Shown here: one piece after another, positions 1,932-32,246 of the stretch
Numbering within the stretch: the first letter of the stretch is position 1
Layout of the letters: every line of letters begins with the position of its first letter
Source: Pecten maximus
Taxonomy: Eukaryota
DNA length: 64,000 nucleotides
Assembly: GCF_902652985.1 (NCBI RefSeq)
Contig: NC_047016.1
Coordinates: 20,708,001 to 20,772,000, forward strand
Direction: 5' to 3'
Notes under the pieces: generated by a model
What the model was told of the DNA's origin: nothing
The model's input: only the letters and a program-made list of their open reading frames with translations
The model's database searches: none
Program-made: the position numbers and the translations under genes

Positions 1932-2760
1932 GTAAGTATGTCTTCCTTGAAGTTATTTTCCGTGTGTCATGGTGTTTATATCAGAGAAAAACATCCGATG
2001 TGTTGAATTGTTTTTTAGGTCAAAACCGTGCGTACAACTTCACGTTCTTTCGGTGTAATCATAAACATACCTGGTAGTAGAACCCCGCTCACGGCGTATA
2101 TACTACATGAACATGTATACAATTGTAATTATGGTATAGAATTACACTGTATACCTGCTCAGCATCATCAGATGATAAAACACCATATGTTATCATTTGT
2201 AAAACGCTATACCTCAAGTATAGAGTGGGCTACCTCTCTTATCACTCCTACCACTCCATAGCTGCTGGGCCAATGACAGATGTGATCAATCTGCAAAGAC
2301 ATCGTCCCATCCTAGAGTCAATTCGTACACAGCAATATAGCACGAATTGTGTATAACAAATAAAACTGTGCAAGCATTTCGAAAATGAACGAATTATTTA
2401 CTGTTGTGCACAATTCCATAATAGACCAAGCTAATAAGAGGACGTATACGACATGCATTCCAGTGTACTTATATGGATTCCATATTATTGGACATTCTGT
2501 TGAGAGTCCAGATGTAATTTGAAGTCATTGTGTAATTGGTAACGTACATGCATTCATTGTTTAATACAAGGTCAGGCGGGATGTTTACCTGATATATTTG
2601 AAATATATTTCAGCGTGCTGTCATGGATTCTTCATAAATGAGATGCCATTGTGACTACATAATTTCTTGTTAAAATGTTTTCTGTACTTGTCTTCCAGGA
2701 GAAACCAAACCGGAACTGGTAATGAAAAATACAAATATTTTATTCGTGTTTTCTCAACAG

Positions 2761-2937
2761 CCACAACACCAGCTACAGCAACTACAACTACACCCACCCC
2801 AACGACCACACCTACAACTACAACAACTACGACAACGCCCTCAACTACGACCATCCCAACAACTACAACAACCACGCCAACAACTACTACCACGCAAACT
2901 ATAACTGTAATTACAACTCCGAAACCAACCACTCCAA
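2761..2937 (+). CDS. Thr/Pro-rich mucin-like exon (phase 1-1)
   Basis: ttttctcaacag acceptor and gtaaga donor at 2938. Open frame TTPATATTTTPTPTTTP...TTPKPTTP with variable third positions of ACN codons. Confidence 0.85.
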
Positions 2938-3146
2938 GTAAGATCCCGTGAAAAGTAAAAATGCTTCTTCCGCATTTTTGTCATTTCAATACAAAATTTG
3001 CATTGGTTGCAGTGCTTTCATTGTCTCTTGCCTGCTTTCGGTTTTATTGAGAAAAAATGAAAACGTCAATATTTCTTTAAAGCAAAAGCTTTCAACACAT
3101 GTAAATACTGTGTGGTTTACATCATCACCACCACCAACAATTACAG

Positions 3147-3623
3147 CAACGACTACCATGCCGACAACTACCACCACGCCCACAACTACAACCACACCCA
3201 CAACCACCACCACTCCTTCAACTACGACGTCCACATCAACGACTACACCTACCTCCACGCCTACAATAACAACAACGCCGACTACAACTACCACGCCCAC
3301 AACCACGACCACGCCTACTACAACAACGATACCAACAACCACGACCATGCCTACAACAACCACGACTCCTACAACCACGACCACGCCTACAACTACCACA
3401 ACGACCACGCCTACTACAACAACGACGCCAACAACTACAACCACGACTCCTACAACCACGACCACACCTACTACAACAACGACGCCAACAACCACGACCA
3501 CGCCTACAACTACCACAACGACCACGCCTACTACAACAACGACGCCAACAACTACGACCACGCCTACAACGACCACGACCACACCTACAACAACCACGCC
3601 TACTACTACTACGCTGGTACCGA
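3147..3623 (+). CDS. Large (PTTTTT)n mucin-like exon (phase 1-1)
   Basis: ttacag acceptor (weak pyrimidine tract) and donor gtaggt at 3624, in the phase needed by the next exon. About 158 codons, mostly Thr/Pro with synonymous variation. Boundaries less certain than the core. Confidence 0.8.
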
Positions 3624-3805
3624 GTAGGTCGATGGCTAATCTTTAAGAAGGATATTTGTAGTATGTTAATAGTATGTTTTAATTCAGTATCAGAATGTGG
3701 TGCGTTCATGCAGCTTATTATTTAATTTGCTTCTGGAAGGAAACGTGTGCTTGCATTTTTCGTTCGTCTTTAAAATGGTTGAAATGAGCTGATTGCATCT
3801 ATGTC

Positions 3806-8181: not shown

Positions 8182-9429
8182 AAGCCGTTTTAACATTTAA
8201 TCCCATTTCCTCTTAAGGTAAAATATGCTTCAAATTTATTTCACTTAAGTGAAATACTTTTTACCTTAAGGTTAAAAGGCTTTTTTTTGCATTATGTTTT
8301 ATTTCACTTAAGTGAAATAATTTTTATTCATCTTAAGGGAAAATCAGTGAAATAAAACATAATTCAAATGCTGCTGTTGAGTAAATAGGACACCCACTCT
8401 CATGAATCAGATATGGACTAGTCCATCTATTGACCAAGCATTAGGTGTTTAATTTCTGACCAATTCGAGACCTTTTCTCTACTTCATTTGTTGTTTGTAA
8501 AATCAATATTATTTCCCATATGATTTACTTTCACTTATGTTTTATTTAAGTAATAAGAACGTGTCAAAGTTAAAGTTTACTCAAGCTGTTTCTTAGTTGA
8601 CATAGCATTGGATTACAGTGTTTAATGGTTTTAACAACATCTTCTTTGTCAAAATCGGTTATCTTATTTAATTTACTTTTAAAAACTAAAAATGAAGGCG
8701 TTTATTAAGCATGATTTCTAATTAATTCCACTATTTCATTATTTTGAGAAAAATCTGTTCATACTTAATAGTATGTATAAGCGAAAGGTTTACACTGAAT
8801 ATATAAATCATAAGTGAAATAAAACAAAATGGAAATAAAACATAATGGAAATAAAACATAAGGAAAATAAATCATAAGTGAAATACAACATAATGGAAAT
8901 ATTTTTTTTTACCTTCGAAAAAATAAAACATCATGGCAATGAAACATAACATATATTGAAATGTGTTTCACTTTACTTTCATGATGATAAAAAAGTATCT
9001 TCAAGTTATGGTTTTAGATATATAAATGTGGTATAAAACCGGTTTGGAGACAGGTCTAAGGGGAGGGTTCATTCCATTATACCATTGGGTGGATAGGAGG
9101 ACAGAGTGACTTTATGAACATATGGACAGTTTTATTTACCTTAAGATGAAAAGAATTTCACTTAAGGGACAAGTATTTTGCATTATGTCTGCACACATTT
9201 TTTTTCACTTAAGTGAAATTCTTTTTGTCTTAAGGGAAGTTAACATTTATTTGCATTATGTTTTATTTCACTTAAATGAAAAAGAATTTCACTTAAGTGA
9301 AATTCTTTTCACCTTAAGGTGAATAAATTATTTGCATTATGTTTTTTACACTTAAGTGAAATTCTTTTTTCACTTAAGTAAAAAAAATATCCCCTTAAGA
9401 GGAAATGGGATTAACTGTTAAAATGGCTT
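8182..9429. mobile_element. Non-autonomous TIR DNA transposon (MITE-like)
   Basis: 37-bp inverted termini aagccgttttaacatttaatcccatttcctcttaagg (8182-8218) and ccttaagaggaaatgggattaactgttaaaatggctt (9393-9429). Subterminal repeats of the palindrome ttcacttaagtgaa. Confidence 0.8.
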
Positions 9430-9527
9430 GCCATACACTGCACATAAATTACACACATGGCCATTGTTTACATATCGAGCATACATGAACTTTGTCTAAT
9501 AATGATTTCATTTAAACATATTAAAAG

Positions 9528-9855
9528 AATACCTCCAGTGATTTGTGTAGGGTATCAGTATACCTCCAGTGATTTATGTAGGGTATCAGTATACCTCCAG
9601 TAATGTATGTAGGGTATCAGAATACCTCCAGTGATTTATGTAGGGTATCAGTATACCTCCAGTGATTTATGTAGGGTATCAGTATACCTCCAGTAATGTA
9701 TGTAGGGTATCAGAATACCTCCAGTGATTTATGTAGGGTATCAGTATATCTCTAGTAGTTTACGTTGGAAGTGAATATCACCATATCTTCAGTGATTTAT
9801 GTAGGATATACCTCCAGTAACTTATGTAGGATATCAACATACTTTGAGTGATTTA
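9528..9855. repeat. 31-bp satellite array 1 (cagtatacctccagtgatttatgtagggtat)
   Basis: Direct tandem repeats; same family as 20075-23330 and 33555-34377. Confidence 0.95.
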
Positions 9856-10851
9856 TTTATACAGATTAAGAAAATTTCCATGCTTGGGTTTGTAATCATT
9901 ATCACAAAATACTAGCGACGATATAGCTTTAACTACTAGTAAAAGGGAAGTAACTCTTCTAAGTAAGTAGATAAAAAGATTAAACACGTGCAGTTCTCTT
10001 GAAATCAAACTAATTTGTATATAACAAAACACTATATCAAACGATATCGATTGACACTGATGAATTTTAGATTATTTGTTCATAACTATATATAGACTGC
10101 ATCTAAAACATAGTTATGTTATGTATAATAAGTATCCTTTTCAGTGTTTGGTGCCGGGATCATAGTCTGGAAAGGGCATTATCTCATTATATATCTAATC
10201 ATGAAAGACATTGCCACAATTATATACACTCAGTGATCTGAAATATTAAAGATTCTACATCGCCAAATACACTGCTTTTCCCAAAAACGACACCCGTTGT
10301 ATCGAAATGTATCTAACCAACACCAACAAACTGAAAAATTGATTACTGACTCCTCATATTCATCGCTTATAAGACCTAAAGTTAAATCCAAAACATATAG
10401 GTGAAGCATGATGGATTTAATTATTTATCCATTCAAAACAAAAAGGTAAAAGGAAAACTTAATTTAGGAGGGTGCTGATAGTGTAAAGTTTTTAACTATT
10501 GGTATTTGTATGTTCAGTCGGTCATCATTATACTTTATCGAACATGTAGCATCTTTAAAGATATGTGTAGTCCCTGTCGTACTTGTTGGTGTCAAATGTA
10601 TTTCATTCACAACAATACTTAACGCAACAATAAACTGTCAACAATAAGCATTGTATTCATCCTTGTCCCAAAAGATACAACATCAGTGAAGTATTCGCAT
10701 TCCAGATCTCCAATACATTCCTTACACATAGAAAGGTAGGATATCATAGAATGTATTTTGAAATCATGTTACATTAAAAAGAATTAGAAAACATCCGGAA
10801 TTTAATAATATAATTTTTGATAAGTTTTCATTTTGTATCTACTCTATATCA

Positions 10852-10952
10852 TTATTTGCAGCAGAAGTAGTAGATGCAACACAGGACGATTATACCCGAA
10901 AATCCTCCTCCTCCGCCAAGGGCTATGAACAATGTGGAATGCGAGGACGAAT
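10852..10952 (-). CDS. Microprotein gene copy A, terminal exon: (D)SSSHSTLFIALGGGGGFSGIIVLCCIYYFCCK*
   Basis: Minus-strand acceptor tttcatttttgtttcag, phase 1. Hydrophobic TM-length segment with a Cys-rich end and TAA at 10854-10852. Confidence 0.8.
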
Positions 10953-11290
10953 CTGAAACAAAAATGAAACATTAAGTTTTCTTTAGGAAATATGTTTTCA
11001 TCCACTTCAAAGGCTAACTAGTTACTGTTTAAATAATTCTTGAATTTAGATTGATCTTTTATATAAAATGATAATGACATAGTTGTGAAAACACATTAAA
11101 TACCTTCCAAAATAAGTAAGCATATAATTGTTCATTTTGAACAATTTAACTTTACATTCCTATTGATTTCCTTAAAAAAGACGAACCGTTCTCTAATTCC
11201 CAATTTTTGTTTAAAGATATTAATATCTTAAATGTTTTTTAATAATACATTGAGATTGCAGGTAACAAAAACAGCTGCTTAACTACCTAC

Positions 11291-11416
11291 CCACAATAGA
11301 ACCACTACATACAATAGAACCACTACCTACTGTAGAACCACTACCTACAGTAGAACCACTACCTACAAGAGAGCCACTACCTACAATAGAACCACTACCT
11401 ACTGTAGAACCACTTC
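11291..11416 (-). CDS. Possible optional exon of microprotein gene A: (GSGSxV)7 from an 18-bp repeat
   Basis: Phase 1-1, 126 nt, acceptor ctattgtag and donor gtaggt at 11290; in frame with the flanking exons. Upstream out-of-frame AGs exist, so it may instead be an intronic minisatellite. Confidence 0.45.
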
Positions 11417-11634
11417 CTACAATAGAACTACTACACACAGTATAAGCCCTACATACAGCAGAAAGATGAACTTAACAATACAAATATCAATAGTTTATGC
11501 AAGTATTGAATGTTTTTTTTTAGCACAATAAGCCAAGCTATCAGTCAAGGATTTTAAGCAAGAAACCAACCAGAATATGAGTTCATTAGATGACTAATCA
11601 CGATAAAAACTGCGTGTTAGTCTCGTCAACTTAC

Positions 11635-11694
11635 CCTCATTCTCTGGCGTTGAATCATACTGGGACAACACTGGGTTTACTAGCAATGTCAGAC
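11635..11694 (-). CDS. Microprotein gene copy A, exon: (C)LTLLVNPVLSQYDSTPENE
   Basis: Acceptor tttttctgttttgtttgacag, donor G/gtaagt, 60 nt, phase 1-1. Confidence 0.8.
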
Positions 11695-12775
11695 CTGTCA
11701 AACAAAACAGAAAAATGCTAAGAAAAAAAATATTAAATTGATAAACGAGTGTGAACATGAACAACAGAACAGCATATGTATCTGCTCGGGAAGCCCGATT
11801 AGAAAACAAGTAATACCAGTTATTTCGGACGAGAAAGCTGCTTCATCGACGACGGGCCGCTATGAAAATATCGGTCGAATCAATCTTAAAAGGAGAATCA
11901 AACAAAACAAGAAATTAGCTAAAATCAAACAAAATTCATAACTTTTAATTTTATAAACGATGGATATTTTTTATAATATCAGAAAATAGCATGGGACAGT
12001 GTTTTATTTCATTGAGGTAATGAGAAAAGAAAATGAGATGTATCTACCCATCTATACTGGAGCAGATTTTCTGACAAAAATAGTCTACGAAATGTCACCG
12101 GTATATATGGGGGATTACTATTTTACAACACTTTGCTTAGTCTTGTATATCGTCCAAGATTTTGTTAGCATACCCGAGCCTCTGATGGTTCCCCTTTCGT
12201 GTTCAACTTGCTTTTATACTGGGCTTGATTCGGCAAAACAATTTTAGTAATTAATACCTTGTCTAATCCTTCTATTTCCTTTTAAGACTCACTTAAAAAG
12301 AGCTGTATCTAAGCAAAGACAAAAATAAATTCATTGAAAATGTCGATTGGATACACCCTTAATACATCAAACCTATGCGACTGTAAACATTTATATATCC
12401 GCTACTATATATATATTTCAACTAAGAACATAGTTTTAATAACCAACAAGGAACCCATTGAACTGTAGGATTAACGTGATAAGTTCCATTTCATATTGAG
12501 AATTTGCTCTTTTTTCGGTAATATATCTCCTTCAAAGTGGGATGTTGACATGTCACAGCCTAATTCACCTTTATTTAATTGTTGAGTTTTGTAATATATT
12601 GTACAAAATGAAGTTATGTCTAGTTGTTATAACCACTGCGGTAACGTGACGCTATGCTGACCTCTATTTGTACATGGCTGCTATCGCCAGGGACTTAAGT
12701 GTTGCCCGATTAAATGAAATATCATACAGCATATCCAATATAAAATGGTTTCATTAATGCCTAAGGTATACTCAC

Positions 12776-12827
12776 AGATATAACCCCACATGATGAACCT
12801 CGTAAATAGCCCGACATTGACGTCCAT
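12776..12827 (-). CDS. Microprotein gene copy A, first coding exon: MDVNVGLFTRFIMWGYI
   Basis: ATG in actATGG context, donor gtgagt in phase 1, upstream acceptor ttttgtttccag at 12860. Joins the next exon to give a signal-peptide-like N-terminus. Confidence 0.75.
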
Positions 12828-13635
12828 AGTAACCGGAACAAGTAGAAAGTGATGATGTTCTGGAAACAAAAACAAAAGAATGTATTTCAAATCAAGCAAA
12901 TAATAATCACTAGGATATCGGAGTCTTGCTCAGTACAAAATACGTTATATTCGTTAAGAATATACACTTCAAACATGTTAATGAAATATAATGGTTTTGC
13001 ATTTAGCTACGTTGAGGACAATTTATGCATTGTGAAATCGATGCACCACAAACCCTAACAACTGACTAAAATGTCTTACAATAATATGAAATGTTCATAC
13101 AAAAACGATACTAGATGTTAACATCTTTCCAATGAATTAAACTATACCATACAGCTGTTTCGTCCTTGTAGGACTCGTCGGTGATACATAGGGTCCAAAG
13201 TGACCATACTTGCTAACTGAGTGCGGAACTCAAAACATGGTCGAAAGAAGTGATGATTTCTCCCACAATGGAAATGATGGAATTGTATTACATCAACAAG
13301 CGATAACTTATTTGCGCTGGTAAAATGGAAAACGGGCAATTTCCGTTATCAGATGGTTATTTGACCCCGCAAATAACTTCACTACTAAATGCTCAATTTG
13401 CTTTGCGCATTGTCACCGCAACGAAGTATTATTAAAAAGTATTCGATTCTATTTGTTCACTACGGTAAACTAATTTGTTATCATCATTGTTATAATTATT
13501 ATGATTTCAAGGTAAAATGAATGTTATTAAAGGAAGAATTTGAATCATTATCAAATGACAAATGACATATTTCTAATGCCAAACATTAAATCACACGAAA
13601 CAATAAATCGTATGATGTCACTGATTCTCAGTCAG

Positions 13636-15520
13636 CCAATGTTTAACATAGTGTGGTTTTTACCTTCAATGTTTAACATACAGTGTGGTTTTTACCAGCC
13701 AGTAATTAACATAAAGTCTGGTTTTACCACCAATGTATCACATACAGCCACCTGGTTTTTACCAGTCAATGATTCACATACAGCCTGGTTTTTACCACCA
13801 ATGGTTAACATACAGTATGGTTTTTACCACAATGTATCACATACCGCCGCATGGTTTTTAGCAGTCAATGTTTAACATACAGCCTGGTTTTTACCAGTCA
13901 ATGTTTCACATACAGCCTGGTTTTACCACCAATGTTTAACATACAGCCTTGGTTTTACCACCAATGTTTAACAAACTGCCTTGGTTTTACCACCAATGTT
14001 TAACATACAGCATGACTTTTACCACCAATATTTAACATACAGCATGGCTTTTACCACCAATGTTTAACATAAAGCATGGCTTTTACCACCAATTTTTAAC
14101 ATACAGCCTGGTTTTTAGCAGTAAATGTTTACCATACAGCCTGGTTTTTAGCAGTCAATGTTTAACATACAGCCTGGATTTTACCACCAATGTTTAACAT
14201 ACAGCCTGGTTTTTACCCCTCAATGTTTCATATACAGCCTTGTTTTTACCGGTCAATGTTTCATATACAGCCTGGTTTTTACCGGTCAATGTTTAACATA
14301 CAGCCTGGTTTTTACCCCAATGGTAAACATACAATCTGGTTTTTACCGGTCAATGTTTCATATACAGCATGGCTTTTACCACCAATGTTTAATATACAGC
14401 CTGGTTTTTACCGGTCAATGTTTAACATACAGCCTGGTTTTTACCACCAATGTTTAACATACAGCATGACTTTTACCACCAATATTTAACATACAGCATG
14501 GCTTTTACCACCAATTTTTAACATACAGCCTGGTTTTTAGCAGTAAATGTTTACCATACAGCCTGGTTTTTAGCAGTCAATGTTTAACATACAGCCTGGA
14601 TTTTACCGCCAATGTTTAACATACAGCCTGGTTTTTACCCCTCAATGTTTCATATACAGCCTTGTTTTTACCGGTCAATGTTTAACATACAGCCTGGTTT
14701 TTACCGGTCAATGTTTAACATACAGCCTGGTTTTTACCGGTCAATGTTTAACATACAGCCTGGTTTTTACCACTAATGTTTAACATACAGCCTGGTTTTT
14801 ACCGGTCAATGTTTAACATACAGCCTGGCTTTTACCACCAATGTTTAACATACAGCCTGGTTTGTAGCAGTAAATGTTTTCCATACAGCCTGGTTTTTAG
14901 CAGTCAATGTTTAACATACAGCATGGCTTTTACCGGTCAATGTTTCATATACAGTATGGCTTTTACCACCAATGTTTAACATACAGTATGGCTTTTACCA
15001 CCAATGTTTAACATACAGTATGGCTTTTACCACCAATGTTTAACATACAGTATGGCTTTTACCACCAATGTTTAACATACAGTATGGCTTTTACCACCAA
15101 TGTTTAATATACAGCATGGCTTTTACTACCAATGTTTAACATACAGCCTGGTTTTTACCGGTCAATGTTTCATATACAGCCTGGTTTTTACCCCTCAATG
15201 TTTAACATACAGCCTGGTTTTTACCACCAATGTTTCATATACAGCCTGGTTTTTACCACCAATGTTTAACATACAGCCTGGTTTTTACCGGTCAATGTTT
15301 CATATACAGCCTGGTTTTTACCGGTCAATGTTTAACATACAGCATGGCTTTTACCGGTCAATGTTTAACATACAGCATGGCTTTTACCGGTCAATGTTTA
15401 ACATACAGCCTGGTTTTTACCGGTCAATGTTTAACATACAGCATGGCTTTTACCACCAATGGTAGACATACAATCTGGTTTTAACCAGCTAGTATTTAAA
15501 ACTCAGTCTGGTTTTAAACA
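13636..15520. repeat. 32-33 bp satellite (caatgtttaacatacagcctggtttttaccac), copy A
   Basis: Direct tandem repeats; source of the MFNIQPGFY ORFs. Confidence 0.97.
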
Positions 15521-17807
15521 CAGATTTCATGTCATGATACAACACATTTACATGTATAAGCATGGTCAAGCAGCGGTAAATTGATTACATCAGAACTAAC
15601 TCGTATTTCATCAAGGCCTCCAATAAAAACACATTTATGTCCAATACTTAAAAGAAAATCCATCAAAGGATCCCGTTAGAGTGCTGAAAAGGATGTAAAA
15701 AAGTAACGGTGACCTGCACCTTGACTCGGCAACCTCGAAAATATCATGTTCTTTTGTAATTGGTTGAAGTTTGATGATGAAAATTCCTTAATCCCTAATG
15801 AATAAAGCCGCTAGAACGTTAACAAAGTTTGGAGTTACGTCCATACAAGACGGTCTGAGAGGATCTAGCATGGTCTCCGATAAAAGTACATACACGAATT
15901 AAGGAAATAGGACACTACATAGTTTCTACATAAAAAAATAATGCTTTGATATTTATAAATACTAATGTTAATACAATTATTCCTTTAGGTTCCGCAGCAA
16001 GGCGCAATTGAATTTTCCATGGTTTTGGGAGGCATTGCCAGCTAGGTCTGTTTAATGCGCCATCACTCTATCGTAGTTATCCTCTTACAAAAAGGATTAA
16101 AATTAACACACTTGGCTATAAAACAGCAATAAGATAAACTACAATAAAGCAATATATTAATAGTAAGCAATAGTGTTAAAAATGAAAAATGTAAAAGCAT
16201 CCAGGCGGGGTTATGAAATGAAAAGAAAACGAAATAACCCTTGTTTGCAGATATTACATCGACAGATCATGACATTAGTGACCAAGCATCCTGATCTATC
16301 TAAAGTTTTCAACTCTTCGGATGGGAGACTGTTCAATACCCGAAACGCATCAAAAGAATATAACTTTTGGCAATAATTAAGGTTTTGTATATATTCATGT
16401 GATACCTTATCAATTATTTTTTAAAACATCAAACGCTATTCCCGTCAAACGCTTTACATGCAATCTGTAGAATTAAGCAATTCTCAGATTGATTGACTGT
16501 GGTTGTTGACGTCAAGCAGGTCCAGCTGCAACCTCCCCCCCCCCCCTTTAAAAACAAAAGAAAAAAAAAACCCAAATCCCCCCCAAAAAACATGCAAACA
16601 AACAAATTAATCAAATTTGCAGTCACATCAGAACATGTTAGGGATTTTCGAATACATGTACCTGATAATGGAGTTTGATACCTATATGTGCATGTTTGGG
16701 CATTAGAGGTTATCTACTCGGTTAATAAAGTTATATTAATAGTGTGATAAGAACGATACTAATGATAATTGCAAACTCAATAATGATTATAAAAGTTTTA
16801 CAGATTTCACACTTCGCGATGTTTACTCTGTCGTTCAATTTCGCTCAAGTCAAAGAGGTCCCGTGCAACTTTTTCAAGTGTCCATTGTTCCTCGTTGTAT
16901 AAACCATTGTAGATATTCCGTTAGTTTATTTTAACTGGCGAACCTTTTGTGTCATCCCATTTCGTCAACCAGAGATTGCGACAAGACGCCCTATCTGTGT
17001 ATACTTCACTTGTTGCCTAGCCCGCGCCAAACACAATTGTAAAAAAATCTCCGCCTTCCTATCAAAGTCGTTAATACTATTTTAAATGCTTGTTGTAGAA
17101 ACCTGTTTATGCAATGCATTAAAGGTATGTAGTAGATAACTAAAACTGCACTTTGAAATATTAAAATTGTTATCTATTATCTTTTAAATAGCTTTAAACT
17201 ATTTTCCCCTTCATTTCAGCGTTTCTCCGGCATAAATCATTTTAAGATAGGTCAAACGATACGATTTTATAGATATTAGGCATATCATTTCCTATTCTTA
17301 AAAAGGTAATTATGTAACAATAAGCATTTAAGTGTCAGGTAAAAACTAGTATAAACGATACATAGGTGATTTGCTAGTTTATTAACATACCTAACTTTTA
17401 GACGCTTTTATTTCAGAATATTTTATTGTATTGAATTAACGCAAAGACAGACTTAAACAACGCCACTCCACACTGACGATTATCAGTAACCATTACACAA
17501 TCAGAGCACCTGTACTTTAATCAAATGGATAGAAAAGGAATTAATATAAGTGTATAGTTTGTTTTCAGATCTTACTGATAGATGTAAGTGTATTGTGATG
17601 TAGTATAAGGGTATTTTGTATCTGGTTTAATATAATGATATCAAAGTCAACATAACCGGTGCCATGCTGTCTTACCATGAGATATTTCTCCTTTACCATG
17701 TTTACCGTAATGTCATGTTTAAATATGTTTTCCTAGTTATTATATATTTGTGCACGGTTGGTTTTTGATGTTTGTTATATTAAAGAATGATATAAATTGT
17801 TTAATAC

Positions 17808-18080
17808 CGTGACTCCTTTTACAAATATTGGATGTTGTGCAGTGACTCCCTAGACGAATATATGTTGTGTTTTTAAGTGACCCCGAAAACGAATATATTT
17901 TGTGCTATAAGGTGACTCCCAAAACGAATATATTTCGTGTTGTATGGTGTCTCCATGAACGAATATATTGGGTGTTATGCATTGACTTCTTGAAGGAATG
18001 TATTGTGTGACACTCGGAAGGCTCTTTGATGGAATGTAGTATGTGATCCGCTGGACTACCACAGGGACATATATGATTTG
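17808..18080. repeat. Degenerate 35-bp minisatellite (gtgactccc..aacgaatatat...), also at about 31307-31580
   Basis: About 7 diverged tandem units. Confidence 0.75.
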
Positions 18081-18684
18081 TCGATTGCAGCCATTGTAAC
18101 TGACTAAACATTTCAAATTGAATTGCGGGTATCATTACGTCTTAACATTTGCAATAAAACAGAATTAAATGTGTAGATTAAACACATGATAATTAATCAT
18201 CCCTGTCGTAAAACTACCCTTTTATCAGTGTTATAAAAATATCGACTTTTTACATTGCATATCAGTCTAATCAAAATAGGGTTTTCATTTTTTTTTTTCA
18301 TTTTTAAAACGCCAATGCGACGGTAAATGAGAAGATTCCCGACTCATTTCTTTAGCCTCATATGAAATTTGAACTGACATGGGCTTGTCTATATTCCAAG
18401 TAGCAACTAATACGAGGATATGAAAATCAGAAAATGTGTTAAAAAGCTTTAAATAATGAAGTAGAACACACCGACATAATATCGAATCCATCAATCTAAC
18501 TAAAAAAGAAGTTAAATCGAGGGCAAAATATAACAAAAAATACAAATTTGCACGGAGATCCCTGAAAGTGCCACAATGGAAAACAATTATAATAAAAAAG
18601 TAAGTATGCGTCGATTATAAATAACACATTTTGATTAAATAGGAATGAGGATTCTACATAAATAAAAACTAAATAAACACTTAC

Positions 18685-18750
18685 CCTGGTGTGTGTCTCA
18701 TTCAGTGCAGTTGCGGTATAGACAGCATTTTCAACGAAATGCTTTATATA
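18685..18750 (-). promoter_or_regulatory. Putative TATA box (TATATAAA, 18750-18743) and short first exon ending in CAGG/GTAAGT; candidate 5' end of microprotein gene A
   Basis: TATA about 65 nt upstream of a consensus donor at 18684, on the same strand as the downstream acceptor at 12860. Confidence 0.5.
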
Positions 18751-20074
18751 CTTGTAACCATAGTTTCATAGACCACGTGGGGAAATTTTAGAAGCAAATA
18801 TTATGTTCGACGTTTAAAATCACATTTATCATCGTCTAATATTTCATTTCTAAAATTAATCGACAAAACAAAGCCAAATAAGAAAAAATAATCAGAAAAA
18901 GTAAAAAAAAAAAACCCACTCCTACTTATATAGCATAGTTGGAGTGTACATTGGGTTAGATTACCCAGAAACACTGGAAGCGGAAGTTTATTTTCTAGGA
19001 AGAGGAGGGGAATTCCCCTTTTGTGATTTTGTACCATGTTTTCCAATTTTACTGAATTCATTATACGTGAAATAAATTCATCATATCACTGTTGCATTAT
19101 AACTACTCCGATCTGTACAAACCATCTTTAGTCTATCATAAAAGTCGATACAATTTTGGGTAAGTCATCATTTGGTTACAATAATGATGTGTAATATAGG
19201 GGGCATAGAAAGAGGGCATCAAAAATAAATGTGAGGTAAAACCTGGCTTATTTAGATAAGCTGATAAATTCATTTTCCAAACCACATTCACAGCATGTAA
19301 GCTCTGGAGCATGGTGTATATCATTACTCTATTCGTTTGGTGCACGAGACTTTTAAATCGAGAAATCGACAGTTAATGCAATGTGTTTGGATTTATATTG
19401 TTGATGCACTTAATTAAGAAGCTAATTTGCCTTCTCGTCTTCATACTAAAGCGTGGTTATATTTCTAATTGGTGGATTCCCACACTCGTCTCCCTATAAC
19501 CACTGACGCGTCGTTGACTCTGCTGAAACAGCTTTATACTATTCAAATGCACTAAATACTTATTGTGATTTCTAGAATCATTTCATATATTACTATTATA
19601 ATCAAGAGTAAGTGCTAAATACTGTTAAAACTGGACACAATGAGGTTGTGCTTTCTTTTGTTCTTAATTGTTCTTTCTCATTTTCTCAATTGTTAAATTG
19701 TTTAGAAAAAAGTACAAAAATATACATTTTGGTAATATTTATATATCATAGTACCACCCCTTCTATCACACAAGTTCTATAATCCCAGATGTTTGTACAG
19801 TTATAAGTTTAGCTAGGTATCTCCTCCGAGACTTGTCAACACTTCAGTAGCATTATCAATTCATGACGGAATAACTTATAAAGGAGTTTTAAGGGCCTAA
19901 TTAGGATTCCCGATGATGTTTTCCTGTATAAGGGCATTAAGAGATAAATCGAAGACACGGCCAAATTTCATACACTTTGGAAACTCCTGCATTCAAAGAT
20001 TAAAATGTAATTGACTGATTTCCTATAAGACACACACTTATTTCAATACCAAACACTTCATATAGTGATATATG

Positions 20075-23000
20075 TATATCAGTATACCGCCAGTAATTTA
20101 CGCAAGATATCAGCATAACTTCAATGATTTATGTAGAATATCAGTATATCTCCACTGACTTACGTAAGGTATCAGTATACCTCCAGTGATTTATGTAGGA
20201 TATCAATATACCTCCAATGATTTACGTAAGGTATCAGTATACCTCCATTAACTTATGTAGGATATCAGTATACCTCCAGTAATGTATGTAGGATATCAGT
20301 ATACCTCCAGTAATTTATGTAGGGTATCAGTATACCTCCAGTGATTGATGTAGGATATCAGTATACCTCCAGTGATTTATGTAGGATATCAGTATACCTC
20401 CAGTGATTGATGTAGGGCATCAGTATACCTCCAGTGATTGATGTAGGGCATCAGTATACCTACAGTGATTTATGTAGGGTATCAGTATACCTCCAGTGAT
20501 TGATGTAGGGTATCAGTATAACTCCAGTGATTGATGTAGGGTATCAGTATACCTCCAGTGATTTATGTAGTATAACAGTATGCCTCCAGTAATTTATGTA
20601 GGGCAACAGTATAACTCCAGTGATATATGTAGGGTACCAGTATATCTCCAATAATTTACGTAGACAATCAGTATACATACAGTGATTTACGTAGGATAAC
20701 AATATACCTTCATTGATATACGGAATTGGTGAGTATACCTCCATTGATTTGTGTAGGAGTTCCGTATACCTCCACTGATTTATGTATGATATCAGTATAC
20801 CTCCAGTGATTGATGTATGGTATCAGTATACCTCCAGTGATTGATGTAGGGTATCAGTATACCTCCAGTGATTGATGTAGGGTATCATTATACCTCCCGT
20901 AATTTATGTAGGATATTTGTATAACTCCCGTGAGTTATGTTGGATAATATTATACCTCCAGTGATTGATGTAGGGTATCAGTATACCTCCAGTAATTAAT
21001 GTAGGATAACAGTATAACTCCAGTGATTTATGTTGGGTATCAGTATACCTCCAGTGATTTATGTAGGATATCAGTATACCTCCAGTAATTTATGTAGGAT
21101 AACAGTATACCTCCAGTGATTTATGTTGGGTATCAGTATACCTCCAGTGATTTATGTAGGATATCAGTATACCTCCATTGATTTATGTTGGGTATCAGTA
21201 TACATCCAGGGATTTATGTAGGATAACAGTATACCTTTAGTGATTTATGTAGGATAACAGTATATCTCCAGTGATTTATGTAGTATAACAGTATACCTCC
21301 AATGATTTATGTAGGATAACACTATACCTCCAGTGATTGATGTAGGATAACATAATACCTCCAGTGATTTATGTAGGATATCAGTATACCGCCAGTAATT
21401 TATGAATGATATGAATATACCTCTAGTAATTTATGAAGGTGGTCAGTACACCTCCAGTGATTTATGTAGTATAACAGTATACCTCCAGTAATTTATGTAG
21501 GACAACAGTATAACTCCAGTGATATATGTAGGGTACCAGTATATCTCCAATAATTTACGTAGACAATCAGTATACATACAGTGATTTACGTAGGATAACA
21601 ATATACCTTAATTGATATACGGAATTGGTGAGTATACCTCCATTGATTTGTGTAGGAGTTCCGTATACCTCCACTGATTTATGTATGATATCAGTATACC
21701 TCCAGTGATTGATGTAGGGTATCAGTATACCTCCAGTGATTGATGTAGGGTATCAGTATACCTCCAGTGATTGATGTAGGATAACAGTATACCTCCAGTG
21801 ATTGATGTAGGATAACAGTATACTTCCAGTGATTGATGTAGGGTATTAGTATACCTCCAGTAATTTATGTAGGATAACAGTATACCTCCAGTGATTTATG
21901 TTGGGTATCAGTATACCTCCAGTGATTTATGTAGGATAACAGTATACCTCCATTGATTTATGTAGGATAACAGTATATCTCCAGTGATTTATGTAGTATA
22001 ACAGTATACCTCCAATGATTTATGTAGGATAACAGTATACCTCCAGTGATTTATGTTGGGTATCAGTATACCTCCAGTGATGTATGTAGGATAACAGCAT
22101 ACCACCAGTAATTTATGTAGGATAACAGTATACCTCCATTGATTTATGTAGGATAACAGTATATCTCCAGTGATTTATGTAGTATAACAGTATACCTCCA
22201 ATGATTTATGTAGGATAACAGTATACCTCCAGTGATTGATGTAGGATATCAGTATACCTCAAGTAATTTATATAGGATAACAGTATACCTCCAGTGATTT
22301 ATGTTGGGTATCAGTATACCTCCAGTGATGTATGTAGGATAACAGTATACCTCCAGTAATTTATGTAGGATAACAGTATACCTCCAGTGATTTATGTAGG
22401 ATAACAGTATATCTCCAGTGATTTATGTAGTATAACAGTATACCCCCAATGATTTATGTAGGATAACAGTATACCTCCAGTGATTTATGTAGGATAACAG
22501 TATACCTCCAGTGATTGATGTAGGATATCAGTAAACCTCCAGTAATTGATGAATGATATGAATATACCTCCAGTAATTCATGAAGGTGGTCAGTACACCT
22601 CTAGTAGTTTACGTAGGAAGTGAATATCAGCATATCTTTAGTGATTTATGTACGGTATCAGTATACCTCCAGTGATTTATGTAGTATAATAGTATACCTC
22701 CAGTAATTTATGTAGGATAACCGTATAACTCGAGTGATATATGTAGGGTACCAGTATATCTCCAATAATTTACGTAGACTATCAGTATACGTACAGTGAT
22801 TTACGTAAGAAAACAATATACCTTAATTGATTGATGGAATTGGTGAGTATACCTCCATTGATTTGTGTAGGAGTTCCGTATACCTCCACTGATTTATGTA
22901 TGATATCAGTATACCTCCAGTGATTGATGTATGGTATCAGTATACCTCCAGTGATTTATGTAGGGTATCAGTATACCTCCAGTGATTGATGTAGGATATC

Positions 23001-23330
23001 AGTATACCTGCAGTAATTTATGTAGGATAACAGTATACCTCCAGTGATTTATGTAGGATAACAGTATATCTCCAGTGATTTATGTAGTATAACAGTATAC
23101 CTTCAATGATTTATGTAGGATAACAGTATACCTCCAGTGATTTATGTAGGATATCAGTAAACCTCCAGTAATTTATGAATGATATGAATATACCTCCAGT
23201 AATTTATGAAGGTGGTCAGTACACCTCTAGTAGTTTACGTAGGAAGTGAATATCAGCATATCTTTAGTGATTTATGTAGGATATACCTCCAGTAACTTAT
23301 GTAGGATATCAACATACTTTGAGTGATTTA
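20075..23330. repeat. 31-bp satellite array 2 (about 100 units) at the duplication junction, with higher-order blocks
   Basis: Direct tandem repeats; a diverged multi-unit block containing ggagttccgtatacc recurs near 20756, 21655 and 22870. Confidence 0.97.
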
Positions 23331-24328
23331 TTTATACAGATTAAGAAAATTTCCATGCTTGGGTTTGTAATCATTATCACAAAATACTAGCGACGATATA
23401 GCTTTAACTACTAGTAAAAGGGAAGTAACTCTTCTAAGTAAGTAGATAAAAAGATTAAACACGTGCAGTTCTCTTGAAATCAAACTAATTTGTATATAAC
23501 AAAACACTATATCAAACGATATCGATTGACACTGATGAATTTTAGATTATTTGTTTTCATAACTATATATAGACTGTATCTAAAACATAGTTATGTTATG
23601 TATAATAAGTATCCTTTTCAGTGTTTGGTGCCGGGATCATAGTCTGGAAAGGGCATTATCTCATTATATATCTAATCATGAAAGACATTGCCACAATTAT
23701 ATACACTCAGTGATCTGAAATATTAAAGATTCTACATCGCCAAATACACTGCTTCTCCCAAAAATGACACCCGTTGTATCGAAATGTATCTAACCAACAC
23801 CAACAAACTGAAAAATTGATTACTGACTCCTCATATTCATCGCTTATAAGACCTAAAGTTAAATCCAAAACATATAGGTGAAGCATGATGGATTTAATTA
23901 TTTATCCATTCAAAACAAAAAGGTAAAAGGAAAACTTAATTTAGGAGGGTGCTGATAGTGTAAAGTTTTTAACTATTGGTATTTGTATGTTCAGTCGGTC
24001 ATCATTATACTTTATCGAACATGTAGCATCTTTAAAGATATGTGTAGTCCCTGTCGTACTTGTTGGTGTCAAATGTATTTCATTCACAACAATACTTAAC
24101 GCAACAATAAACTGTCAACAATAAGCATTGTATTCATCCTTGTCCCAAAAGATACAACATCAGTGAAGTATTCGCATTCCAGATCTCCAATACATTCCTT
24201 ACACATAGAAAGGTAGGATATCATAGAATGTATTTTGAAATCATGTTACATTAAAAAGAATTAGAAAACATCCGGAATTTAATAATATAATTTTTGATAA
24301 GTTTTCATTTTGTATCTACTCTATATCA

Positions 24329-24429
24329 TTATTTGCAGCAGAAGTAGTAGATGCAACACAGGACGATTATACCCGAAAATCCTCCTCCTCCGCCAAGGGC
24401 TATGAACAATGTGGAATGCGAGGACGAAT
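24329..24429 (-). CDS. Microprotein gene copy B, terminal TM exon
   Basis: Same sequence as 10852-10952. Confidence 0.8.
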
Positions 24430-24770
24430 CTGAAACAAAAATGAAACATTAAGTTTTCTTTAGGAAATATGTTTTCATCCACTTCAAAGGCTAACGAGTT
24501 ACTGTTTAAATAATAATTCTTGAATTTAGATTGATCTTTTATATAAAATGATAATGACATAGTTGTGAAAACACATTAAATACCTTCCAAAATAAGTAAG
24601 CATATAATTGTTCATTTTGAACAATTTAACTTTACATTCCTATTGATTTCCTTAAAAAAGACGAACCGTTCTCTAATTCCCAATTTTTGTTTAAAGATAT
24701 TAATATCTTAAATGTTTTTTAATAATACATTGAGATTGCAGGTAACAAAAACAGCTGCTTAACTACCTAC

Positions 24771-24896
24771 CCACAATAGAACCACTACATACAATAGAAC
24801 CACTACCTACTGTAGAACCACTACCTACAGTAGAACCACTACCTACAAGAGAGCCACTACCTACAATAGAACCACTACCTACTGTAGAACCACTTC
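24771..24896 (-). CDS. Possible optional (GSGSxV)7 exon, copy B
   Basis: Same sequence as 11291-11416. Confidence 0.45.
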
Positions 24897-25112
24897 CTAC
24901 AATAGAACTACTACACACAGTATAAGCCCTACATACAGCAGAAAGAAGAACTTAACAATACAAATATCAATAGTTTATGCAAGTATTGAATGTTTTTTTA
25001 GCACAATAAGCCAAGCTATCAGTCAAGGATTTTAAGCAAGAAACCAACCAGAATATGAGTTCATTAGATGACTAATCACGATAAAAACTGCGTGTTAGTC
25101 TCGTCAACTTAC

Positions 25113-25172
25113 CCTCATTCTCTGGCGTTGAATCATACTGGGACAACACTGGGTTTACTAGCAATGTCAGAC
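25113..25172 (-). CDS. Microprotein gene copy B, internal exon
   Basis: Same sequence as 11635-11694 with intact splice sites. Confidence 0.8.
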
Positions 25173-26247
25173 CTGTCAAACAAAACAGAAAAATGCTAAG
25201 AAAAAAAAATTAAATTGATAAACGAGTGTGAACATGAACAACAGAACAGCATATGTATCTGCTCGGGAAGCCCTAAGAAAACAAGTAATACCAGTTATTT
25301 CGGACGAGAAAGCTGCTTCATCGACGACGGGCCGCTATGAAAATATCGGTCGAATCAATCTTAAAAGGAGAATCAAACAAAACAAGAAATTAGCTAAAAT
25401 CAAACAAAATTCATAACTTTTAATTTTATAAACGATGGATATTTTTTATAATATCAGAAAATAGCATGGGACAGTGTTTTATTTCATTGAGGTAATGAGA
25501 AAAGAAAATGAGATGTATCTACCCATCTATACTGGAGCAGATTTTCTGACAAAATTAGTCTACGAAATGTCACCGGTATATATGGGGGATTACTATTTTA
25601 CAACACTTTGCTTAGTCTTGTATATCGTCCAAGATTTTGTTAGCATACCCGAGCCTCTGATGGTTCCCCTTTCGTGTTCAACTTGTTTTTATACTGGGCT
25701 TGATTCGGCAAAACAATTTTAGTAATTAATACCTTGTCTAATCCTTCTATTTCCTTTTAAGACTCACTTAAAAAGAGCTGTATCTAAGCAAAGACAAAAA
25801 TAAATTCATTGAAAATGTCGATTGGATACACCCTTAATACATCAAAACTATGCGACTGTAAACATTTATTTATCCGCTACTATATATATATTTCAACTAA
25901 GAACATAGTTTTAATAACCAACAAGGAACCCATTGAACTGTAGGATTAACGTGATAAGTTCCATTTCATATTGATAATTTACTCTTTTTTCGGTAATATA
26001 TCTCCTTCAAAGTGGGATGTTGACATGTCACAGCCTAATTCACCTTTATTTAATTGTTGAGTTTTGTAATATATTGTACAAAATGAAGTTATGTCTAGTA
26101 ATAACCACTGCGGTAACGTGACGCTATGCTGACCTCTATTTGTACATGGCTGCTATCGCCAGGGACTTAAGTGTTGCCCGACTAAATGAAATATCATTCA
26201 GCATATCCAGTATAAAATGGTTTCATTAATGCCTAAGGTATACTCAC

Positions 26248-26299
26248 AGATATAACCCCACATGATGAGCCTCGTAAATAACCCGACATTGACGTCCAT
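26248..26299 (-). CDS. Microprotein gene copy B, first coding exon: MDVNVGLFTRLIMWGYI
   Basis: accATGG context. Differs from copy A by a synonymous CTA/TTA and a conservative F11L change; donor gtgagt intact. Confidence 0.75.
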
Positions 26300-27107
26300 G
26301 GTAACCGGAACAAGTAGAAAGTGATGATGTTCTGGAAACAAAAACAAAAGAATGTATTTCAAATCAAGCAAATAATAATCACTAGGATATCGGAGTCTTG
26401 CTCAGTACAAAATACGTTATATTCGTTAAGAATATACACTTCAAACATGTTAATGAAATATAATGGTTTTGCATTTAGCTACGTTGAGGACAATTTATGC
26501 ATTGTGAAATCGATGCACCACAAACCCTAACAACTGACTAAAATGTCTTACAATAATATGAAATGTTCATACAAAAACGATACTAGATGTTAACATCTTT
26601 GCAATGAATTAAACTATACCATACAGCTGTTTCGTCCTTCTAGGACTCGTCGGTGATACATAGGGTCCAAAGTGACCATACTTGCTAACTGAGTGCGGAA
26701 CTCAAAACATGGTCGAAAGAAATGATGATTTCTCCCACAATGGAAATGATGGAATTGTATTACATCAACAAGCGATAACTTATTTGCGCTGGTAAAATGG
26801 AAAACGGGCACTTTCCGTTATCAGATGGTTATTTGAACCCGCAAATAGCTTCACTACTAAATGCTCAATTTGCTTTGCGCATTGTCACCGCAACGAAGTA
26901 TTATTAAAAAGTATTCGATTCTATTTGTTCACTACGGTAAACTAATTTGTTATCATCATTGTTATAATTATTATGATTTCAAGGTAAAATGAATGTTATT
27001 AAAGGAAGAATTTGAATCATTATCAAATGACAAATGACATATTTCTAATGCCAAACATTAAATCAAACGAAACAATAAATCGTATGATGTCACTGATTCT
27101 CAGTCAG

Positions 27108-28935
27108 CCAATGTTTAACATAGTGTGGTTTTTACCTTCAATGTTTAACATACAGTGTGGTTTTTACCAGCCAGTAATTAACATAAAGTCTGGTTTTACC
27201 ACCAATGTATCACATACAGCCACCTGGTTTTTACCAGTCAATGTTTCACATACAGCCTGGTTTTTACCACCAATGGTTAACATACAGTATGGTTTTTACC
27301 ACCAATGTATCACATACCGCCGCATGGTTTTTACCACCAATGTTTAACATACAGTGTGGTTTTTACCAGCCAGTAATTAACATAAAGTCTGGTTTTACCA
27401 CCAATGTATCACATACCGCCGCATGGTTTTTACCACCAATGTATCACATACAGCCTGGTTTTTACCACCAATGTATCACATACAGTATGGTTTTTACCAC
27501 CAATGTTTAACATACAGCATGGTTTTTACCACCAATGTTTAACATACAGTGTGGTTTTTACCAGCCAGTAATTAACATAAAGTCTGGTTTTACCACCAAT
27601 GTTTAACATACAGCCTGGTTTTTACCACCAATGTATCACATACAGCCTGGTTTTTACCGGTCAATGTTTAACATACAGCCTGGTTTTTACCACCAATGTA
27701 TCACATACAGCCTGGTTTTTACCGGTCAATGTTTCATATACAGCCTGGTTTTTACCGGTCAATGTTTAACATACAGCCTGGTTTTTACCGGTCAATGTTT
27801 AACATACAGCATGGCTTTTACCATCAATGTTTAATATTTCAATTTCTACTCAAGTTGGACTCAATGAAACTACCAAACTTAATCTGTTTCATTTGCTCAT
27901 GAATTTGACCAGATTAACACTGATCAGTGCGTATGAGTACATGGTTAAAATCCTTCCGCGGAACGATTTCACTTTGTCTATATATTGTTGGTATAAACAT
28001 GGAATAATTATTAAAATCATCAAATTTATAATGTATTCTTGTATTCTATGAAAGACCAGATATGCTAGATACTTCTATTTTGACAAAATAATGCTGTTTT
28101 CAATCCTAAAATTGCGGACTATTTTACTCGACCGACTAGACATGCACAATCTGGAACTCCTCGGGCTTTTCCGCATTTGGACTTGCACAAGCTTCGAGAC
28201 ATTAGACCGACTTTTTTATTCGAAAAAAAAAAAACAATTGAAATATAAGGATTGAATCTTGATTTGGTCGATTTCATGGGGTCATGAATTGAGTTGCTCT
28301 TGAGACAAATGTAATGAATGAGAAAAATTCAACATGAACTGCTTCGCAGTTCATTACATTTGTCTCAAGAGCAACTCAATTCATGACCCCATGAAATCGA
28401 CCAAATCAAGATTCAATCCTTAAACATACAGCATGGCTTTTACTACCAATGTTTAACATACAGTCTGGTTTTTACCGGTCAATGTTTCATATACAGCCTG
28501 GTTTTTACCACCAATGTTTAATATACAGCCTGGTTTTTACCACCAATGTATCACATACAGCCTGGTTTTTACCGGTCAATGTTTAACATACAGCCTGGTT
28601 TTTACCACCAATGTTTAACATACAGTATGGTTTTTACCACCAATGTTTAACATACAGCCTGGTTTTTACCGGTCAATGTTTCATATACAGCCTGGTTTTT
28701 ACCCCTCAATGTTTCATATACAGCCTGGTTTTTACCACCAATGTTTAACATACAGCCTGGTTTTTACCAGTCAATGTTTCATATACAGCCTGGTTTTTAC
28801 CGGTCAATGTTTAACATACAGCCTGGTTTTTACCGGTCAATGTTTAACATACAGCATGGCTTTTACCACCAATGGTAGACATACAATCTGGTTTTAACCA
28901 GCTAGTATTTAAAACTCAGTCTGGTTTTAAACACA
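27108..28935. repeat. 32-33 bp satellite, copy B (shorter, interrupted by an insertion)
   Basis: Same unit as 13636-15520. Confidence 0.97.
27835..28424 (-). mobile_element. Young hairpin-ended non-autonomous element inserted in the satellite, present only in copy B
   Basis: Perfect 73-bp inverted arms 28246-28318 and 28350-28422; inner atgaactGCTTCGCagttcat hairpin; distal end tatttcaatt (27835) complementary to aattgaaata (28236-28245); splits the unit aatgtttaa/catacagc. Confidence 0.9.
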
Positions 28936-32180: not shown

Positions 32181-32246
32181 CCTGGTGTGTGTCTCATTCA
32201 GTGCAGTTGCGGTATAGACAGCATTTTCAACGAAATGCTTGATATA
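32181..32246 (-). promoter_or_regulatory. Copy B of the putative first exon; TATA box altered to TATATCAA
   Basis: Homologous to 18685-18750, with a single substitution at 32241 in the TATA motif. Confidence 0.45.

What the first reader, a model, noticed from the sequence alone, without database searches (positions are those of the whole stretch)
10852..12859. Hidden spliced gene for a 70-aa single-pass membrane microprotein with a poly-Gly TM and Cys-rich tail, present twice
Seen: three minus-strand exons (12827-12776, 11694-11635, 10952-10852) with canonical GT-AG sites, all phase 1. They splice to MDVNVGLFTRFIMWGYICLTLLVNPVLS-QYDSTPENEDSSSHST-LFIALGGGGGFSGIIVLCCIYYFCCK*. The ORF track never shows this product. 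Copy B (26299-24329) keeps every splice site and differs only by F11L and one synonymous change. Inference: a cleaved signal peptide (VLS/Q), a 16-aa acidic ectodomain, a GxxxG-type oligomerising helix and palmitoylatable CC pairs with almost no cytoplasmic tail. This could be a lineage-specific adaptor or auxiliary subunit. I do not recognise the family.
Basis: partly seen in the sequence, partly recalled or inferred. Interest (0 to 1): 0.8.

Follow-up and report, generated by a model that had tools for sequence, protein, structure and literature searches.

The report
Spliced scallop membrane microprotein gene, duplicated

Summary
Copy B is as described.

RNA contigs from 2 of the 4 laid runs (both from one study) lie on exactly these exons and skip exactly both introns.

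Both contigs run on past the exon-1 acceptor, so an upstream exon exists. My unconfirmed candidate is about 18720-18685, behind a TATATAAAG box. It ends in the only G|GTRAGT donor in the 7.1 kb upstream and carries an in-frame TGA.

The second copy is not independent support. It belongs to a recent ~13.5-kb tandem duplication that is about 99% identical in introns too.

The last-exon peptide found no relative in any search.

Best reading: a signal peptide, a ~16-residue acidic Ser/Thr-rich outer peptide, and a C-terminal membrane anchor. The anchor is probably a type-I helix with cytosolic-face Cys pairs. A CD52-like GPI-anchor signal is a serious rival.

The genome matches the published Pecten maximus assembly. 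The function is untested and the interest is modest.

The parts
18742..18750 (-). Candidate TATA box (TATATAAAG) of copy A. Inferred, not confirmed by RNA.
   Evidence: Read. It is the only TATATAAAG, and one of 3 TATAWAAR matches, on the minus strand of 12861-20000. It lies 57-65 nt upstream of the candidate donor.
18685..18720 (-). Candidate non-coding exon 0 of copy A. The 5' end is approximate, set about 30 nt after the TATA box. It ends CAGG|GTAAGT and holds an in-frame TGA at 18700-18698 and a weak-context out-of-frame ATG at 18701-18699.
   Evidence: It ends in the only G|GTRAGT on the minus strand of 12861-20000. Sequence read. Both RNA contigs run on 6 and 20 letters beyond 12860, so an upstream exon exists, but the letters were not shown and this placement is inference. 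The copy-B equivalent lies inside 32266-32166, 100 of 101 letters identical.
12776..12859 (-). Exon 1 of copy A: 32 nt of 5' leader, then ATG at 12827 and 17 codons plus 1 base. The acceptor is ...tttccag|.
   Evidence: RNA contig pieces cover 12774-12860 in X1 and X2.
11635..11694 (-). Exon 2 of copy A, 60 nt, phase 1 on both sides: the end of the N-terminal hydrophobic segment and the start of the acidic Ser/Thr-rich stretch.
   Evidence: RNA contig pieces cover 11635-11692, with a 2-base ambiguity at the joint. Only the coding frame is open.
10763..10952 (-). Exon 3 of copy A: coding to 10855, TAA at 10854-10852, then at least 89 nt of 3' UTR with an ATTAAA at 10806-10801.
   Evidence: RNA contig pieces cover 10763-10952 (X1) and 10794-10952 (X2).
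26248..26331 (-). Exon 1 of copy B (ATG at 26299, in the context ACCATGG).
   Evidence: Differences from copy A listed.
25113..25172 (-). Exon 2 of copy B, identical to copy A.
24329..24429 (-). Coding part of exon 3 of copy B with its stop, identical to copy A.
   Evidence: Own-genome protein search gave 100% over 32 aa.
9526..20872 (.). Tandem duplication unit A. Its twin is 23001-34353. The unit holds a 31-nt satellite, the gene, a 33-nt satellite (13633-15516) and about 4.5 kb of unique DNA.
   Evidence: Self-BLAST, tandem repeats, binned identity.

Best explanation
This is a real, small, spliced gene of the king scallop, present as two near-identical tandem copies.

Shown: an mRNA joins exons 12859-12776, 11694-11635 and 10952 to about 10763 at GT-AG sites, and it carries at least one further 5' exon.

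Inferred:
- Translation starts at the ATG at 12827. The context is A at -3 and G at +4, and the RNA contigs read ACCATGG.
- The product has 70 residues.
- Its first ~28 residues act as a cleavable signal peptide: a 13-residue hydrophobic core after an Arg, then Asn-Pro and Val-x-Ser.
- A ~16-residue acidic, Ser/Thr-rich peptide is exposed outside the cell or in a lumen and is probably O-glycosylated.
- The last ~25 hydrophobic residues hold it in the membrane as a type-I helix. The final Lys and the two Cys pairs then sit at the cytosolic face, where S-acylation is possible.

In short, it would work as a membrane-tethered display of a very short acidic glycopeptide. It has no enzymatic or signalling domain of its own.
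For: - Splicing: contigs in X1 and X2 match all three exons and skip both introns exactly.
- Open frames: the coding frame is the only one that stays open through exon 2, and the only one that runs 32 codons into exon 3, where it ends in two stops in a row.
- Composition: exon GC is 0.42-0.47 in exons 1-2, against 0.31-0.33 in the introns.
- Splice sites: donors are GTGAGT and GTAAGT, and all three acceptors follow pyrimidine tracts.
- Candidate promoter and exon 0: they put an in-frame TGA ahead of the ATG with no in-frame ATG between.
- Hydropathy of the exon-3 peptide: 11-residue means rise from about 0.9-1.6 over the Leu/Gly-rich part to 2.0-2.65 over the last 13 residues, and a single Lys ends the protein.
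- Uniqueness: the gene body is unique apart from its twin.
Against: - The RNA support is thin: 2 runs of one study at about 4.7x word depth. The other 21 of the 23 listed runs hold next to none of the words, though they are small runs, most not on record as RNA.
- There is no evidence of translation.
- There is no ortholog or paralog, so no test of selection: 0 hits at E<=0.001 among 1.84 billion representatives, and only the twin in the genome.
- The two copies differ by 1 non-synonymous and 1 synonymous change, the same rate as the introns.
- Exon 0 is not placed by reads. If another exon 0 is used, the frame is open for 11 codons above the ATG and the protein could start earlier.
- A hydrophobic segment that ends one residue before the C-terminus is unusual for a type-I protein and typical of GPI precursors.
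- I ran no signal-peptide, TM or GPI predictor.
Confidence: 0.45

Rival explanations
1. It is a GPI-anchored micro-glycopeptide laid out like CD52 or CD24. After the signal peptide is removed, GPI transamidase cuts at one of the small residues (the Asp/Ser run, or the Gly run). That leaves only about 11-25 residues of acidic, O-glycosylated peptide on a lipid anchor. The Cys-rich hydrophobic tail would then be a discarded signal.
For: Passages of the review PMC7125958 describe GPI precursors. [quoted passage not shown] The attachment-site residue and the one two places after it are small. The signal ends in about 20 hydrophobic residues. The mature peptide can be as short as 12 residues (CD52).

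Here the hydrophobic stretch ends one residue before the C-terminus and there is no cytoplasmic tail. Ser-Ser-Ser and Gly-Gly-Gly triplets are available, and an attachment site in the Ser run leaves a 29-31-residue signal.
Against: The same passage asks for about 10 hydrophilic spacer residues. Only 3-5 lie between the Ser run and the hydrophobic stretch. If the attachment site is in the Gly run, the hydrophobic tail is only about 12-13 residues.

Four Cys in the last 9 residues would be odd in a discarded signal. No GPI predictor was run. Pfam gave no match at all at E<=10, so also none to the CD52 or CD24 families; a 32-residue query is a weak test.
Confidence: 0.25
2. The transcript is real but the ORF has no function. 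It would be a young, lineage-restricted, possibly de novo transcript between satellite arrays whose 70-codon frame is not under selection: noise, or a proto-gene.
For: No homolog was found anywhere and there is no paralog beyond the recent twin. Expression is low and patchy. The copies show 1 non-synonymous and 1 synonymous difference, at the intron rate. The locus sits between satellites, and a hammerhead-motif repeat lies in the putative intron 0.
Against: By my own estimate from composition (about 7.5% stop codons per random codon at 33% G+C), a frame open for 81 codons or more has a chance of about 0.002. The ATG context is strong. Three good acceptors and two consensus donors give a tidy phase-1/phase-1 structure. 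The product has the ordered layout of a secretory-pathway protein rather than random sequence. The two RNA contigs show no listed difference inside the 213 coding positions and 2 listed differences in the UTRs; one further 'other letter' in the exon-1 piece is not located.
Confidence: 0.2
3. It is a two-pass hairpin microprotein. The N-terminal hydrophobic segment is not cleaved and acts as a first membrane span. Alternatively, translation begins in an upstream exon and the segment is internal.
For: The region ahead of the hydrophobic core carries one Asp and one Arg, so no net positive charge. The frame is open for 11 codons above the ATG. The real exon 0 is not placed by reads.
Against: The uninterrupted hydrophobic core after the Arg is only 13 residues and is followed by Asn-Pro and a Val-x-Ser cleavage-type motif. 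That is signal-peptide length and short for a membrane span (read). The candidate exon 0 carries an in-frame TGA.
Confidence: 0.1

Closest known systems
CD52 / CD24-type GPI-anchored micro-glycopeptides (vertebrates)
   Same: A precursor of about 60-70 residues built as signal peptide, a very short Ser/Thr-rich acidic peptide, and a hydrophobic C-terminus without a cytoplasmic tail. CD52's mature peptide has 12 residues (PMC7125958 passages; abstract of PMC11982460 in the listing).
   Different: There is no sequence relation (Pfam: 0 families at E<=10). The hydrophilic spacer is much shorter than the ~10 residues described. The tail is longer and rich in Cys and Gly. The anchor type is untested. 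This is a resemblance in layout, not membership.
Small type-I single-pass membrane proteins with juxtamembrane Cys pairs (a generic class, not a family; recalled, from no call)
   Same: Signal peptide, short O-glycosylatable ectodomain, one helix, and Cys residues at the cytosolic boundary that could be S-acylated.
   Different: The cytoplasmic part here is at most 1-3 residues, so there is no tail to bind anything. No homology was found to any such protein.
CYSTM, cysteine-rich transmembrane module proteins (Pfam number recalled as PF12734)
   Same: A C-terminal hydrophobic segment that carries several Cys, in a very small eukaryotic protein.
   Different: As I recall them, CYSTM proteins are tail-anchored, with a cytosolic N-terminus and no signal peptide. 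This one has an N-terminal signal-like segment. Pfam gave no match to the exon-3 peptide at E<=10.

Membership tests
GPI-anchored protein precursor (features as in PMC7125958) | [quoted passage not shown] | tested here: inconclusive
   By eye only. Exons 1-2 encode a 13-residue hydrophobic core followed by Asn-Pro-Val-Leu-Ser. No predictor was run, because the segment spans an exon joint and the joined step was left out.
GPI-anchored protein precursor (features as in PMC7125958) | Small residue at the GPI attachment (omega) site and at the position two residues after it | tested here: met
   Ser-Ser-Ser at the start of the exon-3 peptide, and a run of five Gly.
GPI-anchored protein precursor (features as in PMC7125958) | About 10 hydrophilic residues between the attachment site and the hydrophobic stretch | tested here: not met
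   Only Ser-His-Ser-Thr (3-5 residues) precede the hydrophobic run. With the attachment site in the Gly run, the spacer is 5 residues and the tail only 12-13.
GPI-anchored protein precursor (features as in PMC7125958) | About 20 hydrophobic residues at the very C-terminus, with no cytoplasmic tail | tested here: met
   About 25 hydrophobic or Gly residues end one residue (Lys) before the stop.
GPI-anchored protein precursor (features as in PMC7125958) | Actual GPI attachment (PI-PLC release, anchor chemistry) | not testable with these tools
   Needs expression and biochemistry.
CYSTM module (recalled as PF12734) | Match to the family profile | tested here: not met
   hmmscan of the 32-aa exon-3 peptide against Pfam-A found 0 families at E<=10. 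The query is short, so this is a weak negative.
CD52 / CD24 families (Pfam) | Match to the family profile | tested here: not met
   The same scan found 0 families.
Protein-coding gene (generic) | Spliced, polyadenylated mRNA with one dominant ORF | tested here: met
   Spliced contigs in 2 of the 4 laid runs, and the frames. Polyadenylation itself was not seen; there is only an ATTAAA at 10806-10801.
Protein-coding gene (generic) | Purifying selection or evidence of translation | not testable with these tools
   No ortholog is reachable, since no other mollusc genomes are in the tools. The paralog is too recent to inform.

The most novel reading that the evidence does not exclude
This is a scallop-lineage orphan gene, perhaps born de novo between satellite arrays. 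It makes an invertebrate counterpart of CD52: a GPI-anchored, O-glycosylated acidic peptide of little more than a dozen residues on the cell surface. It was recently doubled by a 13.5-kb tandem duplication.
Probability: 0.12. Interest if true: 0.6.

Novelty: new member of a known kind. Interest (0 to 1): 0.33.

Why it matters
Small spliced ORFs like this one are the genes that automatic annotation most easily loses. This case has direct RNA support, which is useful for curating the scallop genome. If the product is made, it would be one of the smallest secretory-pathway membrane proteins described in a mollusc. It would also be a clean case for asking how orphan genes arise and duplicate next to satellite DNA. 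With no orthologs, no evidence of translation and no functional hint beyond its layout, it opens no long-standing question by itself.

Tried and rejected
- Second copy as evidence of constraint: rejected. The duplication is recent, and introns and flanks are as alike as the exons.
- Paralogs in the genome: none. The DNA search gave 81 matches, of which 2 are the two copies. The other 79 fall on query positions 1438-1623, the 18-nt intron repeat. The protein search with the exon-3 peptide gave 4 matches: the 2 copies, and 2 chance hits on poly-Gly runs at E 0.78 and 9.5.
- Homologs of the exon-3 peptide:
  - 0 of 1.84 billion representatives at E<=0.001. An identical sequence would have scored about 61 bits, and I estimate that would have been seen. 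An ortholog near 60% identity over 32 residues might not be.
  - Pfam: 0 families at E<=10.
  - PDB sequences: 0 at E<=10.
  - ESM Atlas: best 0.75, below the level the tool itself calls a lead.
- The search for related loci on metagenome contigs answered 'query too short'.
- The search for homologous proteins was not used. Its length window for a 32-aa query (18-56 aa) excludes a 70-aa product, and the representative search had no such limit.
- Exons 1 and 2 (17 and 19 whole codons) are below the minimum length of every protein tool, so they were only read, not searched.
The repeat also forms arrays on five other scaffolds. I treat it as an intronic minisatellite. Two contigs cannot exclude rare inclusion.
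- tRNA genes: 0 in the window.
- Two paper searches were only for background. One search found 0 papers.
- I did not search the literature for this gene itself, so I make no claim that it is not in print. They could show whether the gene is already annotated.

Full report
**What is in the sequence.** On the minus strand, an ATG at 12827 opens 17 codons plus one base, ending at 12776 before GTGAGT. After ...tttgacag, exon 2 (11694-11635, 60 nt) ends before GTAAGT. After ...tttgtttcag, exon 3 starts at 10952 and reaches TAA at 10854-10852. Both introns are phase 1.

Translated exon by exon, the coding frame gives:
- a 17-residue peptide that is mostly hydrophobic after an Arg;
- a 19-residue peptide that finishes this hydrophobic run (Asn-Pro-Val-Leu-Ser) and goes on acidic and Ser/Thr-rich;
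- a 32-residue peptide that starts Ser-Ser-Ser-His-Ser-Thr and is then hydrophobic to the last residue but one. It contains a run of five Gly and two Cys pairs and ends in Lys.

Other features point the same way:
- In exon 2 only this frame is open. In exon 3 the other frames stop after 9 and 35 codons.
- Exons 1-2 have G+C of 0.42-0.47, the introns 0.31-0.33.
- The ATG has A at -3 and G at +4.

**RNA evidence.** Of the 23 runs listed for this stretch, 2 (X1 and X2, one study, RNA-Seq libraries of organism A) hold 5% of its sampled words. The other 21 hold next to none.

I laid X1, X2, X9 and X3 on 9960-13620. X1 and X2 each gave one contig (341 and 324 nt, word depth about 4.7). The contigs lie on 10763/10794-10952, 11635-11692 and 12774-12860. 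The joints skip 682 and 1081 bases and end CT..AC on the plus strand, which is GT..AG on the minus strand. The second joint is movable by 2, which places it at 11694/12776.

X9 and X3 gave nothing on the exons. Both contigs read G at 12828, which is the copy-B letter and makes ACCATGG. X1 also reads A at 10797. No difference is listed inside the 213 coding positions. One further 'other letter' in the exon-1 piece is not located by the table. This is spliced RNA from one study at low depth. It shows the junctions but not the ends, the strand or the expression level.

**A further 5' exon.** Both contigs stop matching at 12860, right at the ...tttccag acceptor, and run on for 6 (X1) and 20 (X2) letters that the tool did not place or print. 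So at least one exon lies upstream.

The minus strand of 12861-20000 holds a single G|GTRAGT, at 18685. At 57-65 nt upstream of it lies TATATAAAG (18750-18742). That is the only copy of that 9-mer and one of three TATAWAAR matches in those 7.1 kb. My rough estimate for such a pairing by chance is a few per cent.

A start about 30 nt after the box gives a ~36-nt exon 0 (about 18720-18685). Its last base would open the split codon of exon 1. It carries an in-frame TGA at 18700-18698 with no in-frame ATG after it. It also carries an out-of-frame ATG (18701-18699) in a weak context. If this is the real exon 0, the ATG at 12827 is the start codon.

Copy B keeps this stretch, 100 of 101 letters identical, at 32266-32166. 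This is inference.

**The second copy.** It differs in the coding sequence at 12797 (Phe to Leu, codon 11) and 12809 (synonymous), and in the leader at 12828.

It is part of a tandem duplication of about 13.5 kb: 9526-14363 against 23001-27837, 15007-16380 against 28420-29794, and 16378-20872 against 29859-34353. In the gene core (9900-13640) I count 26 substitutions and 6 gap openings in about 3,746 columns, about 0.7%. That compares with 2 of 213 (0.9%) in the coding sequence. The copies are simply young, and kept splice sites are not evidence of selection.

The whole genome holds only these two copies.

**Organism.** G000 has 918,306,378 bases in 3,983 contigs. These are the figures given for the Pecten maximus assembly in passages of PMC7191990. 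The window is C2:20708001-20772000.

**Relatives.** The only exon long enough to search is exon 3 (32 aa). It found nothing:
- 0 hits at E<=0.001 in 1.84 billion representative proteins;
- 0 Pfam families at E<=10;
- 0 PDB sequences at E<=10;
- best ESM Atlas score 0.75, a 68-aa arthropod hypothetical, below the level the tool calls a lead.

A near-identical protein would have been found. A moderately diverged ortholog might not. No other mollusc genome can be reached with these tools.

**How it most likely works.**

Shown: a spliced mRNA with one dominant ORF.

Inferred from the layout:
- The N-terminal segment has signal-peptide proportions: a 13-residue core, a helix breaker, and small residues at -3 and -1.
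- About 16 acidic Ser/Thr-rich residues follow.
- The last ~25 residues are hydrophobic, most strongly the final 13 (11-residue Kyte-Doolittle means of 2.0-2.65).

I commit to a type-I membrane microprotein. It would display a short, probably O-glycosylated acidic peptide, with its Cys pairs and terminal Lys at the cytosolic face, where S-acylation is possible. Confidence is 0.45.

The main rival (0.25) is a GPI-anchored glycopeptide of the CD52 type. The review passages describe just this layout: a signal peptide, and a C-terminal signal of 20-30 residues that ends in about 20 hydrophobic ones. The attachment-site residue and the one two places after it are small, and the mature peptide can be as short as 12 residues. 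Here the hydrophilic spacer is too short (3-5 against about 10).

Lesser rivals are a transcribed but functionless young ORF (0.2) and a two-span hairpin (0.1).

A tail of 1-3 residues offers no docking surface.

**Verdict.** The topology is plausible and untested, and the 'present twice' argument is void. It is a new, family-less member of a known kind: small secretory-pathway membrane peptides and orphan smORF genes. Interest is 0.33.

Noticed in passing
window 13144-13187 (-) and 26616-26659 (-): A type-I hammerhead ribozyme motif (Rfam RF00163) scores 34.3 bits against a gathering score of 34 in copy A, and 33.5 bits in copy B. It is on the same strand as the gene, about 285 nt upstream of the exon-1 acceptor, so it would lie inside the putative intron 0. 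The core reads CCGACGAG where the model has CUGAcGAG, so it may be inactive. The genome holds at least 110 matches, some in 49-52-nt tandem arrays (for example C19:10086795-10088246). RNA contigs of all 4 laid runs pile up here at 90-95% identity, which must come from other copies.
   Followed up: partly
window 11287-11463: An 18-nt minisatellite (about 8 units) sits in intron 2. It reads Gly-Ser-Gly-Ser-Ile/Thr-Val in one minus-strand frame. Both RNA contigs skip it, and similar arrays lie on C7, C13, C3, C12 and C17.
   Followed up: partly
window 9400-9950, 19950-23331 and 33555-34360; also 13633-15516, 27108-27834 and 28423-28928: Two satellite families (31-nt and 32/33-nt units, up to about 105 copies) bracket the gene and mark the edges of the 13.5-kb tandem duplication unit.
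   Followed up: partly
window 2667-3646 (+): Long open frames of (Thr)5-Pro-type repeats (18- to 117-nt periods, G+C 0.42). This looks like a mucin-type Pro/Thr-rich exon on the strand opposite the microprotein gene.
   Followed up: no
window 37793-38670: A 12-nt unit is repeated about 73 times (83% matches) inside a 347-codon open frame on the plus strand. It reads Gly-Glu-Thr-Thr-like at its start and Val-Arg-Pro-Gln further on.
   Followed up: no
window 43802-44972 and 59419-60440: Two further tandem arrays: 59-nt units x 20 (93% matches) and 22-nt units x 46.
   Followed up: no
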